Positions 32,751 to 38,652 are shown, counted from the whole stretch's first letter. The stretch: 63,040 nucleotides of DNA, filler included, from Octopus bimaculoides (GCF_001194135.2; 4 parts of 4 records of this genome joined end to end with filler, not necessarily neighbours in it); one strand, 5' to 3'. Translations and numbers: made by a program. The notes: a model not told the origin generated them from the sequence alone.

Positions 32751-32994
32751 TCGCCATCTGCTGCCATTCGGCAAGGACTTCTTGGCGAGCATCCAAGACG
32801 CTGTCTCGCTGCGCCAAAGATTGCATGTGTTTGTTGATTTCGTCCATATTTCCACCGGATGTCTGTGGAGGTTTTTCATCATTTACTCCAACGACGACGT
32901 CTTTTCCGCGCATGCTCATTGTCTCTTGCTCGTCAGTCGGATGGTAAGTATCGTCTCCAAGACAAACCAACTTGCGTAATCCTTTCAGGAATAT
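32751..32994 (-). CDS. nAChR-like exon G (intracellular loop to MA helix; truncated by N-gap)
   Basis: Acceptor ctctccctccag, phase 0; IFLKGLRKLVCLG...EVLAEWQQMA then gap. EW...A normally precedes (V/L)DR and M4. Confidence 0.92.
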
Positions 32995-34406
32995 CTGGAG
33001 GGAGAGATTGAGAGGATGTGAGCTTAAGAGAAAGAGAGGGAGAGAGAGGGAGAGAGAGGTAGAGAAGGATAGAGGAAATGAAAATAGAGGAAGAAATTGT
33101 AATATAATATTAAATATAGATATGAATATATAGAGGGGAACAATAAGTTAATGAAACATTTCCGCAATCATTTTGCACAAAATATAATGGAAAATAGAAA
33201 ACAGGCATCCACTATGCTTACATATACGTTGTCATACACACATACACACACATACATACATACACACAGAGAAAGGTAATGTTTGTTGCCACTTCAACGT
33301 ATTACTACATTTTAACCCCACGAAAAGATCTTTTCCAGCTGGTTCACGACACACGGCCCGTGGAAAAAATGCGCAGCAGACCAAAAGAAATCAGGCAAAT
33401 GAGTAAAATTTAACATAATTATCATCTCACCTAAATGCCGTAGAATGAAGTAACAGATATACCTGCATCATAATTTCGAATCCTGGCCAGTGCCTTAATT
33501 CTCCTGAGCAGATTTTGCCATACCGAATATGAAAAATCCAACCCGTTTCGCTGGAATCCAGCGTGCGTGCGAACGTGTGTGTGTTGGGGGGAGTGCGTGT
33601 ATGCGCGCGTGTGTGTTTATGTATACGCGTGTGTGTGTCTGAGTGTGTAAGTATATATCGTATTTCAATCTTCTAAAGAGACCGGTTTGTCTTACCGTTC
33701 GCAATATCTGCGGCATCTTCTTTCTTCTTGGTCCTCTGTTGTAAATGTTCAGGATGAATATTGACAGAATCACAGACAACGCAACCAAGATCAACGTAAG
33801 CACGTGGTACGTCACTGAAAAAAAAAATGCAGAAAGTCTGTATTACACACAGACACACACAACTGTTTTAAATAACATGTAATTCCTACTAAATGTGTTG
33901 GGTGTCATTCCATCCTCTCCATCCCTACCACGAAAAATATGATCTTGTTGCATCCACAGTAAATATACACACAAACAAACCACAAACAAAAATAACAGAT
34001 GATTATTCATTATAACAATAACACAACACGTGAACACCATTCCATCACAAATGTATAATTCATTGTAAGCATGTGTATCTGCAAGAAATAAAAACGAAAA
34101 GCATACAGCTGAATAAAGACACGCGCGCGTTAAAATTATGAATACACTATCAATACCGAGTTGTTACAGTTCTCGCCTGAAGATATCATTGGCATGAAAC
34201 TCGAATTGCGAAACAAACTCTCAGTTTCAGTTTCAATGTGAAAAGAAAACCCAACATCGCCACCATAATGTTCATCATCATCGTCATTGTGATCGCCCTC
34301 ATCAACAACAGTAGTAGTGCCACTACCACCATCAATATCCTTCTCATCCTCCTCCTCCCCTCCTCCCTGCCCCCTCCTTACCTCCTCCCCTCCCCCTCAT
34401 CCCCCA

Positions 34407-34440
<34 letters not shown>

Positions 34441-34604
34441 TCTATCACCAGCATGTTCATTATTGTCATAGTCATACTTACAAATAACCGGGTTACCCGC
34501 TTGGCTTTTCGCTAACCAGTTGGAAATGACGTTAATCTGGATGACACTTATTACAACGAGGGCGATTCCTAGAAAAAAGAGAGAGAGAGACAAAGCGAAT
34601 GAGC

Positions 34605-37600: not shown

Positions 37601-38406
37601 AAATTTTTGTCGTGGTTAGATGATTCAGCATCTATTTCTAGCATTTAGGAATCCACATTTGCTGGTCATTCCTCTTATTTTGTATATATATACATGTACA
37701 TAAGTGTACTCTTGTGTCTATGGATACGTAAGTGTATTTATGTAAGTGTATACATGTGAATTTTGACTTACTAATTGTAAAGGATTATATCAGGAGTCCA
37801 AATGTATTTGGCAGGCAAACGGATGTCCTCCATGTTGTCATAATCACTGGCGTTCCAACTTAACGAAACATCGGTCCATTTTTGTGAAAAATAACCGTCG
37901 ACTGTAAACTTCCTTTCTTGTTCGTCCTATTTGAAAGAAAAACGAAGAAAACGGGAATACGAACAAAGAAATGAATTTGGAGGAGATAAAAAAAAAAGGA
38001 ATAAAGAAGAAAAAGAAGTGTCAGCCGTAGGGGAAGTAGTAGTAGTAGTTCTTGTTGTTGTAGTAGTAGTAGCAGTAGCAGCAATAATTGTAGTAGTAGT
38101 AGTAGTAGTAGATGTAGGAGGAGAAGGATGGAGGTAGATTTAGAAGGGAGGTGTAAGGGATGTGGTGCGAGGAGGAAGTGAAAGAAGAAATAAAAGAAAA
38201 GAAAAGAAAAGAAAAGAAAAGAAAGCATAAAAAGAAAAGAGAAAAATAAGGAAGAAAAAAAAGAAAACAAAAAGAAGAATTATATCAGACACTTAGTATT
38301 TGTATTGAGTTCTTTTTTCAGTTAATGGTCGTTGTTTGAAGCATATTATATCATTTCTCGTAACTATATAGAAAATGAGACATACAGTAAAGTAAGGGAG
38401 AGAGGA

Positions 38407-38471
<65 letters not shown>

Positions 38472-38652
38472 ACAAAGAAAGGATGGAAAATTGTGATTAC
38501 CATTTGAATATTGTTGACGTAGAGATCCAAAGTCACGTTAACAGCTGCATTCGCGTCAGGTAAGACAAGAGTGTTGGACGTTTCAAGAAGATGCTTAATC
38601 AGACGTCCCCGTGATGCTGACGACGCTGTATCCGATTTTCCATTAGACAAAG
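32751..38652 (-). CDS. Cys-loop ligand-gated ion channel, nicotinic acetylcholine receptor alpha-like subunit (partial; 7 exons visible)
   Basis: Spliced translation gives WTPDIILYN (loop A), Cys-loop CAFDMSKFPFDIQTC, GSWVYD (loop B), YSCCIQSY (loop C), M1-M3 and the MA helix AEWQQMA. All six introns are GT-AG with matching phases (0,2,0,1,1,0). Signal exon and M4 not visible. Confidence 0.96.
33696..33814 (-). CDS. nAChR-like exon F (M3 and MX: TYHVLTLILVALSVILSIFILNIYNRGPRRKKMPQILRT)
   Basis: Acceptor ttttttcag, donor gtaaga; 119 nt, phase 1 to 0; matches the nAChR post-M3 motif NI..R.P....MP.. Confidence 0.95.
34173..34211 (+). ncRNA. Hammerhead relic (antisense, in nAChR-like intron)
   Basis: TCGC-CTGAAGA-TATCATTGGCAT-GAAAC(TCGA)ATT-GCGA: core and stem I intact; stem II and G16.2 degenerate. 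Confidence 0.5.
34482..34568 (-). CDS. nAChR-like exon E (M2 and M2-M3 loop: GIALVVISVIQINVISNWLAKSQAGNPVI)
   Basis: Acceptor tttttctag, donor gtaagt; 87 nt, phase 1 to 1; continues ITLG and ends in PVI like the canonical VPLI. Confidence 0.9.
34958..35138 (-). CDS. nAChR-like exon D (loop C YSCCIQSY, M1, M1-M2 linker)
   Basis: Acceptor tctttgtcacag, donor gtatgt; 181 nt, phase 0 to 1; LRR..Y....IVP (M1 proline) and FLLPSESKERITL. Confidence 0.96.
36471..36738 (-). CDS. nAChR-like exon C (Cys-loop, loop B)
   Basis: Acceptor tgttttatcag, donor gtaagg; 268 nt, phase 2 to 0; C-x13-C with FPFD, then GSWVYD and PNEKWEI. Confidence 0.97.
37160..37685 (-). mobile_element. Hammerhead-containing foldback element, family X copy 1 (arms 37257-37331 / 37611-37685)
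   Basis: 75-bp arms with one mismatch; the post-HHR region is homologous to 47877-48041, and the arm and tail to 62270-62410. Confidence 0.75.
37421..37491 (-). ncRNA. Type I hammerhead ribozyme with extended stem II, intronic and sense to the nAChR-like gene
   Basis: GACTTAGG-CTGACGA-TCCTG...ATTTAC(TTAT)GTAAAT...CAGGT-GAAA-C(TATG)G-TA-CGTAGGTT: 7 of 8 stem I pairs, U:U at the stem II closing pair, GUA site. Confidence 0.72.
37772..37926 (-). CDS. nAChR-like exon B (DEQERKFTVDGYFSQKWTDVSLSWNASDYDNMEDIRLPAKYIWTPDIILYN)
   Basis: Not in the ORF track; translated by hand. Acceptor ctttcaaatag, donor gtaagt; 155 nt, phase 0 to 2; WxD..W...Y..I.LP...IW.PDI.LYN motif. Confidence 0.95.
38501..38652 (-). 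CDS. nAChR-like exon A (mature N-terminus: LSNGKSDTASSASRGRLIKHLLETSNTLVLPDANAAVNVTLDLYVNNIQM)
   Basis: Acceptor ttttaacag, donor gtaatc; 152 nt, phase 1 in, phase 0 out; N-terminal helix and beta1 pattern of pLGICs. Confidence 0.88.

What the first reader, a model, noticed from the sequence alone, without database searches (positions are those of the whole stretch)
32751..38652. nAChR alpha-like subunit with a conserved agonist site but an unusual pore
Seen: loop A Tyr (LYN), loop B Trp (GSWVY) and loop C Y-x-CC-xxx-Y are retained, and loop D has Tyr at the usual Trp position. By manual alignment to alpha7 numbering, M2 reads E-1' R0' I T2' L G I A6' L V V9' I S V I13' Q I N V I S N20'. The 9' Leu gate becomes Val, 6' Thr becomes Ala, polar Gln14' and Asn16' appear, the 20' Glu is lost, and the conserved 23' Pro of the M2-M3 loop becomes Ala. 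Known: octopods have an expanded set of divergent AChR-like genes, including chemotactile receptors that lost the ACh site. Inference: this is a separate divergent type, changed in gating rather than ligand binding; it could be an intermediate lineage or a modulatory subunit.
Basis: partly seen in the sequence, partly recalled or inferred. Interest (0 to 1): 0.7.

Follow-up and report, generated by a model that had tools for sequence, protein, structure and literature searches.

The report
Divergent octopus nicotinic-like receptor paralogue
This is a real but incompletely assembled Octopus bimaculoides gene for a nicotinic-receptor-like ion-channel subunit, one more duplicate in a fast-evolving cephalopod gene cluster; most of its odd pore is shared with its relatives, so it is only moderately unusual.

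Summary
Both flagged gaps lie in introns. A third gap (32190-32750) removes M4, and the signal-peptide exon lies outside the piece.

The window is O. bimaculoides chromosome CM046621.1. The gene sits tail-to-tail with a paralogue (XP_014769463.2) and belongs to a cephalopod-only clade (100% bootstrap) inside a mollusc-only clade. That clade is separate from human alpha7, and the gene is not a chemotactile receptor: those are intronless and have lost the ACh-coordinating residues.

Most of the "unusual pore" (A6', V9', Q14', N16', N20', plus an unnoticed K-2') is shared with sister genes whose M2 is under purifying selection. Private changes are P23'A (Pro in 88 of 90 others), W21', I10' and Glu-to-Gln at the loop-C tip.

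Exons A-E are an old duplicate (dS 0.3-0.4). Exons F-G are homogenised with the sister.

The retained aromatic cage does not prove ACh gating, because dopamine-gated DopC channels keep it too. Best reading: a probably functional, lineage-specific cation-channel subunit with an altered gating linker. Expression, ligand and M4 are untested.

The parts
38501..38652 (-). Exon A: N-terminal helix and first beta strand (…SNGKSDTASSASRGRLIKHLLE…YVNNIQM). It starts in phase with 2 nt of a split codon, so a signal-peptide exon must lie upstream, outside the piece.
   Evidence: Acceptor tttaacAG and donor GTaatc. Homologous to exon 2 of P0001 and P0009. No first exon found in 38653-40275.
37772..37926 (-). 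Exon B: beta1-beta2 loop (DEQER), loop D with Tyr at the alpha7 W55 position (37893-37891), loop A WTPDIILYN with Tyr at 37779-37777.
36993..37159 (.). Assembly gap inside intron B/C. No coding sequence is lost.
36471..36738 (-). Exon C: loop E, Cys-loop C-x13-C (36641-36597, CAFDMSKFPFDIQTC), loop B GSWVYD (Trp at 36578-36576), loop F.
35234..36175 (.). Assembly gap inside intron C/D. No coding sequence is lost.
34958..35138 (-). Exon D: loop C Y-S-C-C-I-Q-S-Y (35123-35100), pre-M1 RRH, M1, M1-M2 loop and the start of M2 (K-2' E-1' R0' I T L G4'; 34976-34958).
34482..34568 (-). Exon E: M2 from 5' onwards and the M2-M3 linker (IALVVISVIQINVISNWLAKSQAGNPVI). V9' is at 34554-34552, Q14' at 34539-34537, N20' at 34521-34519, A23' (GCG) at 34512-34510.
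33696..33814 (-). Exon F: M3 and the start of the intracellular loop (TYHVLTLILVALSVILSIFILNIYNRGPRRKKMPQILRT). 97% identical in protein to the O. sinensis and O. vulgaris sister gene.
32751..32994 (-). Exon G, cut by the gap: intracellular loop and the amphipathic helix before M4, ending …AEWQQMA. Identical in all 81 codons to exon G of the neighbouring paralogue.
32190..32750 (.). Assembly gap (561 N) that should hold the rest of exon G: M4, the stop codon and the 3' UTR. A 927-bp contig placed at the paralogue's 3' end (CM046621.1 4802560-4803486) overlaps exon G identically. It runs 591 bp further through MVIDRIMFILFLIIFVISTISIFPDAFY-stop and ends in (ATT)n, the repeat with which the window resumes at 32189 on the minus strand.
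   Evidence: Inference only, not proven.

Best explanation
The finding is a genuine multi-exon gene, incomplete in this assembly, for an alpha-type Cys-loop receptor subunit of Octopus bimaculoides (chromosome CM046621.1). It is the older member of a tail-to-tail pair of paralogues in a small cluster of cephalopod-specific nAChR-like genes that NCBI auto-names 'alpha-5-like'. The clade's nearest relatives are mollusc 'alpha-9/alpha-10-like' subunits.

Shown:
- Identity, exon structure and location.
- Clade membership.
- A mosaic history: exons A-E diverged before the O. bimaculoides / O. sinensis split, while exons F-G are homogenised with the sister gene.
- Retention of the structural and binding-site hallmarks.
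- Most pore peculiarities are clade traits kept under purifying selection in the sisters.

Inferred: it encodes a functional subunit of a cation-selective pentameric ligand-gated channel.
- Cation selectivity is expected because E-1' is kept and there is no Pro-Ala anion motif.
- The agonist is a small cationic amine, ACh-like or monoamine; which one is not determinable from sequence.
- The pore has Val at the 9' gate, polar Gln14' and Asn16', no 20' acidic ring and Lys at -2'. From general knowledge of alpha7 and muscle-receptor mutants, this predicts easier opening or slower desensitisation, and lower conductance and divalent permeability than alpha7.
- The gene's private changes (P23'A, W21' and the rest of the M2-M3 linker, plus the Glu-to-Gln change at the loop-C tip) lie where binding is coupled to gating. 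The paralogue has most likely diverged in gating kinetics or efficacy.
- Its M3 and intracellular loop are identical or nearly so to the neighbour's, so it may co-assemble with it.
For: Gene model: searches give seven GT-AG exons and a 401-aa open frame.

Family: (Pfam LBD and TM domains). One search gives human alpha7 as the best solved relative (2.9e-59) and the alignment used for numbering.

Locus: searches show 100% identity to GCA_001194135.2 CM046621.1 with the same gaps. A gene with both Pfam domains is annotated at the locus, and the convergent paralogue P0009 lies about 7 kb away.

Conserved structure: one search shows identical exon boundaries in P0009, P0001 and P0008.

Divergence:
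- Exons A-E: dS 0.30 to P0009 and 0.41 to P0001, against 0.15 between the orthologues P0009 and P0001.
- Exons F-G: dS 0-0.12.
- The M2 exon of the sisters has dN/dS 0.15.

Phylogeny: (WIN,(P0009,(P0001,P0008))) at 99-100%, a cephalopod clade at 100%, and a mollusc clade with the Aplysia and Elysia 'alpha-9-like' genes at 98%.

Residues: the aromatic cage, vicinal Cys and E-1' are kept; K-2' and Q14' are clade-wide; V9', N16' and N20' are shared with the sisters; A23' is unique (Pro in 88 of 90 others and in all 7 other clade members).

Constraint:
- 32 of 39 near-invariant family positions are kept, and only one loss is private. A stop-free frame over exons A-E is expected in only 0.25-10% of neutral simulations.
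- polarised changes in M2 plus linker are 5 on this lineage against 0 on the sister lineage (extracellular domain 18 against 25; Fisher p = 0.02).
Against: - No expression evidence. No transcript-derived or annotated protein above 72% identity exists in the 5.8-billion-protein collection.
- No orthologue is annotated in O. sinensis or O. vulgaris, although dS implies the duplication predates their split.
- dN/dS over exons A-E is 0.6-0.85, which is weak constraint.
- It has lost a nearly universal proline (23') and the loop-C Glu.
- M4, the stop codon and the first exon are not in the sequence, so completeness of the gene cannot be shown.
- Ligand, selectivity and gating statements are sequence-based inference only.
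- The deep nodes of my NJ tree are unresolved (bootstraps below 12%).
Confidence: 0.6

Rival explanations
1. It is a decaying or unexpressed duplicate: a young pseudogene that has not yet acquired a stop codon, kept looking intact in its 3' half by gene conversion from the functional neighbour.
For: - dN/dS is 0.6-0.85 in exons A-E.
- It has privately lost the near-universal Pro23' and the loop-C Glu.
- M2 plus linker changed only on this lineage.
- No matching transcript or protein is in the databases and no annotated orthologue exists in two other Octopus genomes.
- The 3' half is identical to the neighbour's.
Against: - 1206 nt are open with seven canonical splice-site pairs, despite dS 0.3-0.4.
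- Neutral simulations give a stop-free A-E frame in only 0.25-10% of runs, before counting indels.
- It keeps 32 of 39 invariant positions, about as many as its sisters (34-35).
- The sister orthologues, clearly conserved between species, show an equally high extracellular-domain dN/dS (0.8), so that rate is a clade property and not decay.
- Its overall branch length is similar to the sisters'.
Confidence: 0.2
2. It is a monoamine-gated (DopC-like) channel subunit rather than an ACh receptor. The kept aromatic cage serves a catecholamine, as in the dopamine-gated cation channels of octopus, Aplysia, Apis and Daphnia.
For: - DopC channels keep the cage and YxCC yet do not respond to ACh (10.1101/2025.04.02.646353).
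- Their reported signatures are a Ser in Y-S-C-C and an Asp after SWxY (10.1101/2025.10.31.685654).
- The window's protein has Y-S-C-C and SWVY-D, whereas its sisters do not.
- Relatives of the clade are auto-named alpha-9/alpha-10-like, the vertebrate group nearest to DopC.
Against: - It lies in a mollusc-only clade (98%) that excludes the probable DopC pair P0094 and P0091.
- It has Gly, not Ala or Ser, two residues before the loop-B Trp, and Ala, not Gly, after the Asp.
- YSCC occurs in about 17% and SWxYD in about a third of the 98 sequences, so co-occurrence by chance is not rare.
- The DopC identity of P0094 and P0091 is itself inferred from motifs.
Confidence: 0.08
3. It is a chemotactile receptor (CR) or an evolutionary intermediate towards the CRs.
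For: - It is a cephalopod-specific, clustered nAChR-like gene whose extracellular domain evolves fast.
- A 'CR-like' clade with broad molluscan distribution has been described (PMC13174522), and I could not place this gene against it.
Against: - CRs are intronless and have lost ACh-coordinating residues (PMC13174522; PMC10338036). This gene has at least 8 exons and keeps the cage and the vicinal Cys.
- CRT1 and CRB1 are absent from the best 60 PDB sequence matches (all at or below 3.8e-36) and from the best 50 fold matches to the sister protein's model, while alpha7 leads both lists.
Confidence: 0.04
4. The mosaic (old 5' half, sister-like 3' half) is an assembly artefact: contigs from two paralogues or haplotypes were joined or misplaced in this gap-rich scaffold.
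For: - Five gaps lie in 12 kb, nearly all flanked by microsatellites.
- A 927-bp contig placed at the paralogue's 3' end fits the window's own gap in sequence, in its end repeat and in size.
- The paralogue's model reads intron as protein because of a gap.
Against: - Exons D, E, F and G lie on one uninterrupted contig (32751-35233), so the divergent M2 exon and the sister-like exons F and G are physically linked.
- The paralogue has its own different exons D and E and the start of its own exon F on another contig.
- Misplacement of the small contig would change which gene owns that M4 copy, but not the existence or content of this gene.
Confidence: 0.06

Closest known systems
Octopus bimaculoides XP_014769463.2 (P0009) and its orthologues: O. 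sinensis XP_029656644.1 / XP_036355646.1 (P0001) and O. vulgaris CAI9738545.1 (P0008), all auto-named 'neuronal acetylcholine receptor subunit alpha-5(-like)'
   Same: - Same 8-exon structure and the same cluster.
- 69-72% protein identity.
- Identical or near-identical M3, intracellular loop and probably M4.
- Same K-2', A6', V9', Q14', N16', N20' and loop-D Tyr.
   Different: - Extracellular domain only 57-60% identical.
- 12 of 34 positions in M2 plus linker differ, including the unique P23'A, W21' and I10'.
- Loop A is Tyr here and Phe in the sisters; loop C is YSCC-IQ here against Y(P/A)CC-PE.
- The duplication predates the species split (dS 0.3-0.4 against 0.15).
- None of these proteins has been functionally characterised, as far as the searched literature shows.
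Human alpha7 nAChR (e.g. PDB 7EKI, 7KOO)
   Same: - Best solved-structure match by sequence (2.9e-59) and, for the sister protein's model, by fold (TM 0.78-0.90).
- Same aromatic cage except W55 to Y, the vicinal Cys, the Cys-loop FPFD, E-1' and the pre-M1 Arg.
   Different: - About 27% identity.
- Not an orthologue: alpha7 groups with other sequences in the tree.
- The pore differs at -2', 6', 9', 10', 13', 14', 16', 20' and 23'.
Aplysia californica NP_001267752.1 and Elysia GFS09476.1 'alpha-9-like', with Patella KAK6169466.1 in the same mollusc-only clade
   Same: They are the nearest non-cephalopod relatives (98% bootstrap). They share loop-D Tyr in place of Trp (Aplysia) and R0'.
   Different: About 33% identity. 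They keep Leu9', Pro23' and other pore residues. The Aplysia and Elysia proteins lack the loop-B Trp. Their function is unknown to me.
Dopamine-gated cation channels DopC1 and DopC2 (O. sinensis LOC115218923 and LOC115215511; Courtney et al., bioRxiv 10.1101/2025.04.02.646353)
   Same: nAChR-type cationic subunits that keep the aromatic cage and YxCC. The window's protein shares the Y-S-C-C serine and the Asp after SWxY.
   Different: It is not in the same clade in my tree. It lacks the Ala or Ser before the loop-B Trp. The ligand is untested.
Cephalopod chemotactile receptors CRT1 and CRB1 (van Giesen 2020; Allard 2023; Kang 2023, as cited in PMC10338036 and PMC13174522)
   Same: Cephalopod-expanded, clustered members of the nAChR superfamily with fast-evolving ligand domains.
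   Different: CRs are intronless and have lost the ACh-site residues. This gene is intron-rich and keeps them. CRs do not appear among its best PDB matches.
Alvinella pompejana Alpo4 (PDB 8BX5), an orphan lophotrochozoan nAChR-like receptor
   Same: High-ranking solved lophotrochozoan relative: 2e-55 for the window's protein, and the best match for the clade member P0014. It is an orphan with a divergent pore.
   Different: Alpo4 lacks the vicinal Cys (PMC10338036), and it is an annelid protein from a different family.

Membership tests
Cys-loop pentameric ligand-gated ion channel, nAChR-type alpha subunit | Neurotransmitter-gated channel ligand-binding domain followed by the transmembrane domain | tested here: met
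   PF02931 1.2e-47 (residues 16-216) and PF02932 1.3e-19 (224-361).
Cys-loop pentameric ligand-gated ion channel, nAChR-type alpha subunit | Cys-loop of 13 residues between two cysteines, containing FPFD | tested here: met
   CAFDMSKFPFDIQTC at 36641-36597.
Cys-loop pentameric ligand-gated ion channel, nAChR-type alpha subunit | Vicinal cysteines in loop C (YxCC), the mark of alpha-type subunits | tested here: met
   Y-S-C-C at 35123-35112.
Cys-loop pentameric ligand-gated ion channel, nAChR-type alpha subunit | Four transmembrane helices M1-M4 | tested here: inconclusive
   M1-M3 are present. M4 falls in the 561-N gap at 32190-32750. A contig that may fill the gap encodes an intact M4.
Cys-loop pentameric ligand-gated ion channel, nAChR-type alpha subunit | Cation-selectivity signature: Glu at -1' and no Pro-Ala(-Arg/Lys) motif | tested here: met
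   K-E-R at -2', -1' and 0'. Actual selectivity is not testable here.
Cys-loop pentameric ligand-gated ion channel, nAChR-type alpha subunit | Gated by acetylcholine | not testable with these tools
   The aromatic cage is kept, but DopC channels show that this is not sufficient (10.1101/2025.04.02.646353).
Cephalopod 'alpha-5-like' cluster clade (unnamed and uncharacterised) | Monophyly with P0009, P0001, P0008, P0013, P0003, P0004 and P0014 | tested here: met
   100% bootstrap in an NJ tree of 98 sequences and 391 columns. HMMER bit scores drop sharply outside the clade, from 837-892 to 427.
Cephalopod 'alpha-5-like' cluster clade (unnamed and uncharacterised) | Shared exon structure and clustered genomic location | tested here: met
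   Same exon boundaries in four Octopus genes. Neighbouring family genes are present in L001, L002 and L003.
Cephalopod 'alpha-5-like' cluster clade (unnamed and uncharacterised) | Clade pore signature: K-2', R0' and a polar 14' residue | tested here: met
   K-2' and R0' in 8 of 8 clade members. The 14' residue is Gln in 6 of 8 (Gly in P0013, Glu in P0014). The 90 other sequences are mostly G-2', K0' and F14'.
Vertebrate alpha5 (the automatic NCBI name) | Orthology to CHRNA5 | tested here: not met
   The gene lies in a mollusc-only clade. The best solved relative is alpha7, not an alpha5-containing receptor. Unlike alpha5, it keeps a full principal-face cage; the alpha5 comparison is my own knowledge.
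Cephalopod chemotactile receptors (CRs) | Intronless gene of retroposition origin | tested here: not met
   At least 8 exons. The feature is as stated in PMC13174522.
Cephalopod chemotactile receptors (CRs) | Loss of the ACh-coordinating signature residues | tested here: not met
   Y93, W149, Y188, the vicinal Cys and Y195 are all kept. The feature is as stated in PMC10338036.
Cephalopod chemotactile receptors (CRs) | Phylogenetic placement within or next to the CR clade | not tested
   No CR sequence could be obtained. Indirectly, CRT1 and CRB1 are absent from the top 60 sequence and top 50 fold matches in the PDB.
Dopamine-gated cation channels (DopC / dop-LGIC) | Orthology to DopC1 or DopC2 | tested here: inconclusive
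   The probable DopC pair P0094 and P0091 (identified by motif only) lies outside the 98%-supported mollusc clade holding this gene, but deeper nodes are unresolved.
Dopamine-gated cation channels (DopC / dop-LGIC) | Serine at the x position of the loop-C YxCC motif | tested here: met
   Y-S-C-C.
Dopamine-gated cation channels (DopC / dop-LGIC) | Asp directly after the loop-B SWxY motif, followed by Gly | tested here: inconclusive
   The sequence is SWVY-D-A. The Asp is present, but Ala replaces Gly; the paper reports one dop-LGIC with Ala at this position.
Dopamine-gated cation channels (DopC / dop-LGIC) | Ala or Ser two residues before the loop-B Trp | tested here: not met
   Gly, in Y-G-S-W.

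The most novel reading that the evidence does not exclude
The cluster to which this gene belongs would be a second, intron-containing cephalopod lineage of nAChR-derived receptors, independent of the intronless chemotactile receptors. Its ligand-binding domains diversify rapidly (extracellular-domain dN/dS about 0.8 even between orthologues) around a conserved, unusual channel core (K-2', V9', Q14', no 20' ring). This implies tuning to non-ACh ligands. The window's gene would be a neofunctionalised member that has also rebuilt the binding-to-gating linker (unique P23'A) and converged on DopC-like loop B and loop C residues.
Probability: 0.12. Interest if true: 0.6.

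Novelty: new member of a known kind. Interest (0 to 1): 0.3.

Why it matters
Molluscs, and octopus in particular, have greatly expanded the nicotinic-receptor family (78 genes in O. bimaculoides; PMC6896357). Members of that expansion have repeatedly turned out to do unexpected things, such as contact chemosensation, dopamine-gated excitation and ACh-gated inhibition.

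This gene and its cluster form an uncharacterised branch of the expansion, with an atypical but conserved pore and a fast-evolving ligand domain. They are a reasonable candidate for deorphanisation.

The private Pro23'-to-Ala change is a natural experiment at a nearly invariant position of the gating interface.

In practical terms, the public models at this locus are damaged by assembly gaps. The neighbour's model reads intron as protein. This gene's 715-residue model probably reads through a gap. Anyone using these models in phylogenies or expression constructs should know this.

Tried and rejected
I used a profile of P0001, P0003 and P0004 instead.
The explanation of the annotated 715-residue product therefore rests on arithmetic only.
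3. P0005 has no locus on record.
4. Search for an orthologue in O. vulgaris: no inverted copy lies within 10 kb downstream of P0008. Synteny with the window's intergenic DNA only starts at the very end of that locus, so the result is uninformative rather than negative. The O. sinensis contig ends just past the stop codon. The Argonauta locus has no extra copy within 10 kb.
5. No signal-peptide exon or M4 exon is in the piece, by tblastn at E = 10 and by an ORF-plus-donor scan.
6. The van Giesen 2020 paper is not held. No paper mentions the accessions.
7. The alignment supplement of the DopC paper is too gappy and was cut when stored, so it holds neither DopC1 nor this clade.
8. The first AlphaFold model, built from a 3-row alignment, was unusable (pLDDT 49). 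The second, with 93 rows, reached pLDDT 89.
9. Rfam found nothing in the piece.
10. Comparing the intron flanks of the M2 exon was uninformative because they are microsatellites.
11. I considered that the M2 exon was specially accelerated relative to neighbouring exons and rejected it. Its dS (0.39-0.48) matches exons A and C, so it simply belongs to the old 5' part of the mosaic. The asymmetry lies in which lineage changed.

Full report
**What is in the sequence**

The piece (28044-40275, 36.7% G+C) contains five runs of N. On the minus strand, stop-free segments with clear Cys-loop-receptor sequence appear in the expected order. Reading the junctions gives seven exons, each with a polypyrimidine-AG acceptor and a GT donor, and with consistent phases:

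| Exon | Window coordinates |
|---|---|
| A | 38652-38501 |
| B | 37926-37772 |
| C | 36738-36471 |
| D | 35138-34958 |
| E | 34568-34482 |
| F | 33814-33696 |
| G | 32994-32751 |

Together they give an open 401-aa frame. Pfam finds the ligand-binding domain (1.2e-47) and the transmembrane domain (1.3e-19) of neurotransmitter-gated channels.

**The gap question**

The two gaps flagged in the finding both fall in introns: 36993-37159 in intron B/C and 35234-36175 in intron C/D. Three related genes from gap-free or differently gapped assemblies have exactly the same exon boundaries and no extra exon at those places. Their proteins align across both junctions without indels. The reading frame is therefore continuous across both gaps in the spliced product.

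A third gap (32190-32750) is more serious. It cuts exon G directly after …AEWQQMA, so M4 and the stop codon are not in the sequence.

The first (signal-peptide) exon is also absent. Exon A starts with two bases of a split codon. Intron 1 is 4.5-5 kb in the relatives, only 1.6 kb lies upstream here, and neither tblastn nor an ORF-plus-donor scan finds a candidate.

HMMER's alignment to human alpha7 and a 98-sequence alignment confirm every statement.
- Loop A has Tyr, loop B has Trp in GSWVY, and loop C reads Y-S-C-C-I-Q-S-Y.
- Loop D has Tyr where alpha7 has W55.
- M2 reads E-1' R0' I T L G I A6' L V V9' I S V I Q14' I N16' V I S N20' W L A23'.

- Lys at -2', so the motif is K-E-R rather than the usual G-E-K.
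- The residues after the vicinal cysteines are Ile-Gln rather than the usual Pro-Glu. Glu occurs there in all seven other clade members and in 60 of 90 other sequences.
- M4 is missing.

**Where the window comes from**

The closest proteins in the large collection are octopod 'alpha-5(-like)' predictions at no more than 72% identity. Fetching the locus of the newer O. bimaculoides model XP_014769463.2 (P0009) shows that the window itself is part of that locus.

Window 28044-34312 is 100% identical, with the same gaps, to GCA_001194135.2 chromosome CM046621.1. The conversion is window coordinate + 4,778,669.

The window's gene is annotated there as a minus-strand gene with both Pfam domains and a 715-residue product. 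P0009 is the plus-strand neighbour, tail-to-tail, about 7 kb away. A third family member lies upstream of P0009. O. sinensis, O. vulgaris and Argonauta have corresponding clusters.

**Relationships**

A profile search of 1.84 billion representatives gives 837-892 bits within the clade and 427 bits or less outside it. A bootstrapped NJ tree (98 sequences, 391 columns) gives:
- (window gene,(P0009,(P0001 O. sinensis, P0008 O. vulgaris))) at 99-100%.
- A cephalopod-only clade of eight at 100%.
- A mollusc-only clade, adding the Aplysia and Elysia 'alpha-9-like' genes, Patella and one transcript-derived protein, at 98%.

Human alpha7 groups elsewhere. Deeper nodes are unresolved.

**History of the gene**

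Nei-Gojobori estimates show a mosaic.

| Exons | Comparison | dS |
|---|---|---|
| A-E | window gene vs P0009 | 0.30 |
| A-E | window gene vs P0001 | 0.41 |
| A-E | P0009 vs P0001 (orthologues) | 0.15 |
| F-G | window gene vs P0001 | 0.12 |
| G | window gene vs P0009 | 0 (81 identical codons) |

The duplication is therefore older than the species split, yet the 3' part is at orthologue-level divergence or less. Nucleotide identity to the O. sinensis locus rises from 69-72% at exons A-C to 86-90% at exons F-G. The orthologous P0009 locus is 78-92% identical throughout. The simplest reading is gene conversion of the 3' part between the inverted paralogues.

There is a caveat. The neighbour's exon G sits on a 927-bp contig flanked by gaps on both sides. 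That contig is identical to the window across exon G. It continues for 591 bp through an intact M4, the stop codon and the 3' UTR, and it ends in (ATT)n. The window's own gap is estimated at 561 N, and the window resumes on the minus strand with (ATT)n. That contig may therefore belong in the window's gap. In either case the most likely M4 of this gene is MVIDRIMFILFLIIFVISTISIFPDAFY, which is an inference.

**Is the pore unusual, and is that special to this gene?**

Against 90 non-clade sequences, the clade is unusual at several positions.

| Position | Clade | 90 other sequences |
|---|---|---|
| -2' | Lys in 8 of 8 | Gly in 66 |
| 14' | Gln in 6 of 8 | Phe in 57 |
| 6' | Ala in the five octopod proteins that align there (window gene, P0009, P0001, P0008, Argonauta P0003) | Thr in 52 |
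| 9' | Val in the four closest Octopus genes | Leu in 73, Val in 8 |
| 16' | Asn in the four closest Octopus genes | Leu in 58 |
| 20' | Asn in the four closest Octopus genes | Glu or Asp in 69 |

These residues are identical in P0009, P0001 and P0008, whose M2 exon has dN/dS 0.15. The odd pore is therefore a conserved, selected trait of the subfamily and not a peculiarity of the window's gene.

Private to the window's gene are Ile10', Ser11', Ser19', Trp21', Ala23' and most of the M2-M3 linker. Pro23' is present in 88 of 90 other sequences and in all seven other clade members. Polarising with outgroups, M2 plus linker changed 5 times on this lineage and 0 times on the sister lineage, against 18 and 25 in the extracellular domain (Fisher p = 0.02).

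**Functional or decaying?**

Against decay:
- The frame is open over 1206 nt with intact splice sites.
- Neutral simulations at the observed divergence leave exons A-E stop-free in only 0.25-10% of runs, ignoring indels.
- The gene keeps 32 of 39 positions that are at least 85% conserved across the family. Five of its six deviations are shared with its conserved sisters.
- Its branch is no longer than theirs.

For decay:
- dN/dS is 0.6-0.85 in exons A-E.
- It has lost Pro23' and the loop-C Glu.
- No transcript-derived protein matches it, and there is no annotated orthologue.

The high extracellular-domain dN/dS is a clade property (0.8 between the orthologues P0009 and P0001). It therefore does not by itself indicate decay.

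**What ligand?**

Recent work shows that this inference is unsafe. Octopus DopC1 and its orthologues are nAChR-type cation channels that keep the cage and YxCC, are gated by dopamine, and do not respond to ACh (bioRxiv 10.1101/2025.04.02.646353).

Their reported signatures (10.1101/2025.10.31.685654) are Ser in Y-S-C-C, Asp-Gly after SWxY, and Ala or Ser two residues before the loop-B Trp. The window's protein has Y-S-C-C and SWVY-D-A but Gly before the Trp. Its sisters have none of these.

Sequences with the full signature fall outside its clade. It is therefore not a DopC orthologue, and the partial match may be chance or convergence. The agonist cannot be assigned from sequence.

**Not a chemotactile receptor**

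CRs are intronless and have lost the ACh-site residues (PMC13174522; PMC10338036). This gene has at least 8 exons and keeps those residues. CRT1 and CRB1 are not among the 60 best PDB sequence matches (all at or below 3.8e-36, led by alpha7). They are also not among the 50 best fold matches to a confident model (pLDDT 89) of the sister protein P0001, which are all canonical nAChRs. I could not obtain CR sequences for a direct tree.

**Mechanism (inference, from general knowledge of alpha7 and muscle receptors)**

- Glu-1' without a Pro-Ala motif predicts cation selectivity.
- Loss of the 20' acidic ring and a Lys next to the -1' ring predict lower conductance and divalent permeability.
- Val at the 9' gate, together with polar 14' and 16' residues, predicts a less stable closed or desensitised pore, as in alpha7 L247 mutants.
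- The 23' proline caps M2 at the interface with the beta1-beta2 and Cys loops. Its replacement, together with Trp21' and the loop-C Glu-to-Gln change, most plausibly alters coupling efficacy or kinetics.
- The M3 and intracellular loop are identical or nearly so to the neighbour's, which makes co-assembly with it plausible.

None of this is tested.

**Verdict**

This is a real gene, described correctly at the residue level. It overstates the uniqueness of the pore and the conservation of the agonist site. The gene is a new, uncharacterised member of a known kind, already carrying an automatic and gap-damaged annotation. Interest is modest.

Noticed in passing
L002 18187-19113 (CM046621.1 4802560-4803486) and window 32190-32750: A 927-bp contig, gap-flanked on both sides, is placed at the neighbouring paralogue's 3' end. 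It is identical to the window's exon G. It carries M4, the stop codon and the 3' UTR, and ends in (ATT)n. The window resumes after its own 561-N gap with (ATT)n on the minus strand. The contig may be misplaced or duplicated.
   Followed up: partly
window 31828-38673 (annotated gene, L002 25297-28608+): The public annotation gives this locus a 715-residue product. Exons A-G, read in frame through the 561-N gap (187 codons) into about 120 residues of microsatellite-encoded junk up to a stop at 31830-31828, give 709-721 residues depending on the start. Starting at FLSILTALSNGK gives exactly 715. The model's C-terminus is probably an artefact.
   Followed up: partly
L002 17483-18260; window 33018-32995: The neighbour's models XP_014769463.1 and .2 lack the second half of M3 and contain 'SHPLNLSL', which is translated intron sequence upstream of exon G. 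The cause is a 667-N gap that removes most of its exon F.
   Followed up: yes
P0009 vs P0001 (L002 and L001), exons A-C compared with exon E: Even the conserved orthologue pair has an extracellular-domain dN/dS of about 0.8, while its M2 exon has 0.15. The ligand domain of this subfamily evolves almost neutrally or under diversifying selection, around a constrained channel core.
   Followed up: partly
window 34976-34974 and the same column in the clade: Lys at M2 position -2' (K-E-R) occurs in all eight clade members, against Gly in 66 of 90 other nAChR-like sequences. This puts a positive charge next to the selectivity-filter glutamate.
   Followed up: partly
window 36176-36328, 31255-31467, 30694-30839, 31919-32189; L001 5129-6535: Interspersed repeats have many copies (77-95% identity) in the O. 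sinensis and O. vulgaris loci. One family forms a tandem array with a period of about 182 bp in L001. One copy abuts the gap at 36175.
   Followed up: no
window 28044-28181, 28492-28572, 29906-30017, 31168-31231, 32113-32189, 34578-34648, 38398-38466, 40158-40264: Microsatellites, namely (AAT)n, (TG)n, (AC)n, (ATT)n, (AG)n and (GA)n, flank most of the assembly gaps and several exons. They probably caused the gaps.
   Followed up: partly
L001 1347-1679; L002 5405-5665; L003 2770-3030: The last exon (intracellular helix plus M4) of another family member lies upstream of the sister gene in all three Octopus species (49-55% identity). The tandem arrangement is conserved.
   Followed up: partly
L004 27583-28131 (Argonauta hians BAAFZT010000054.1): In the Argonauta relative, residues corresponding to exons C and D, up to the start of M2, align as one uninterrupted 549-nt block. 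This suggests intron loss relative to the Octopus genes.
   Followed up: no
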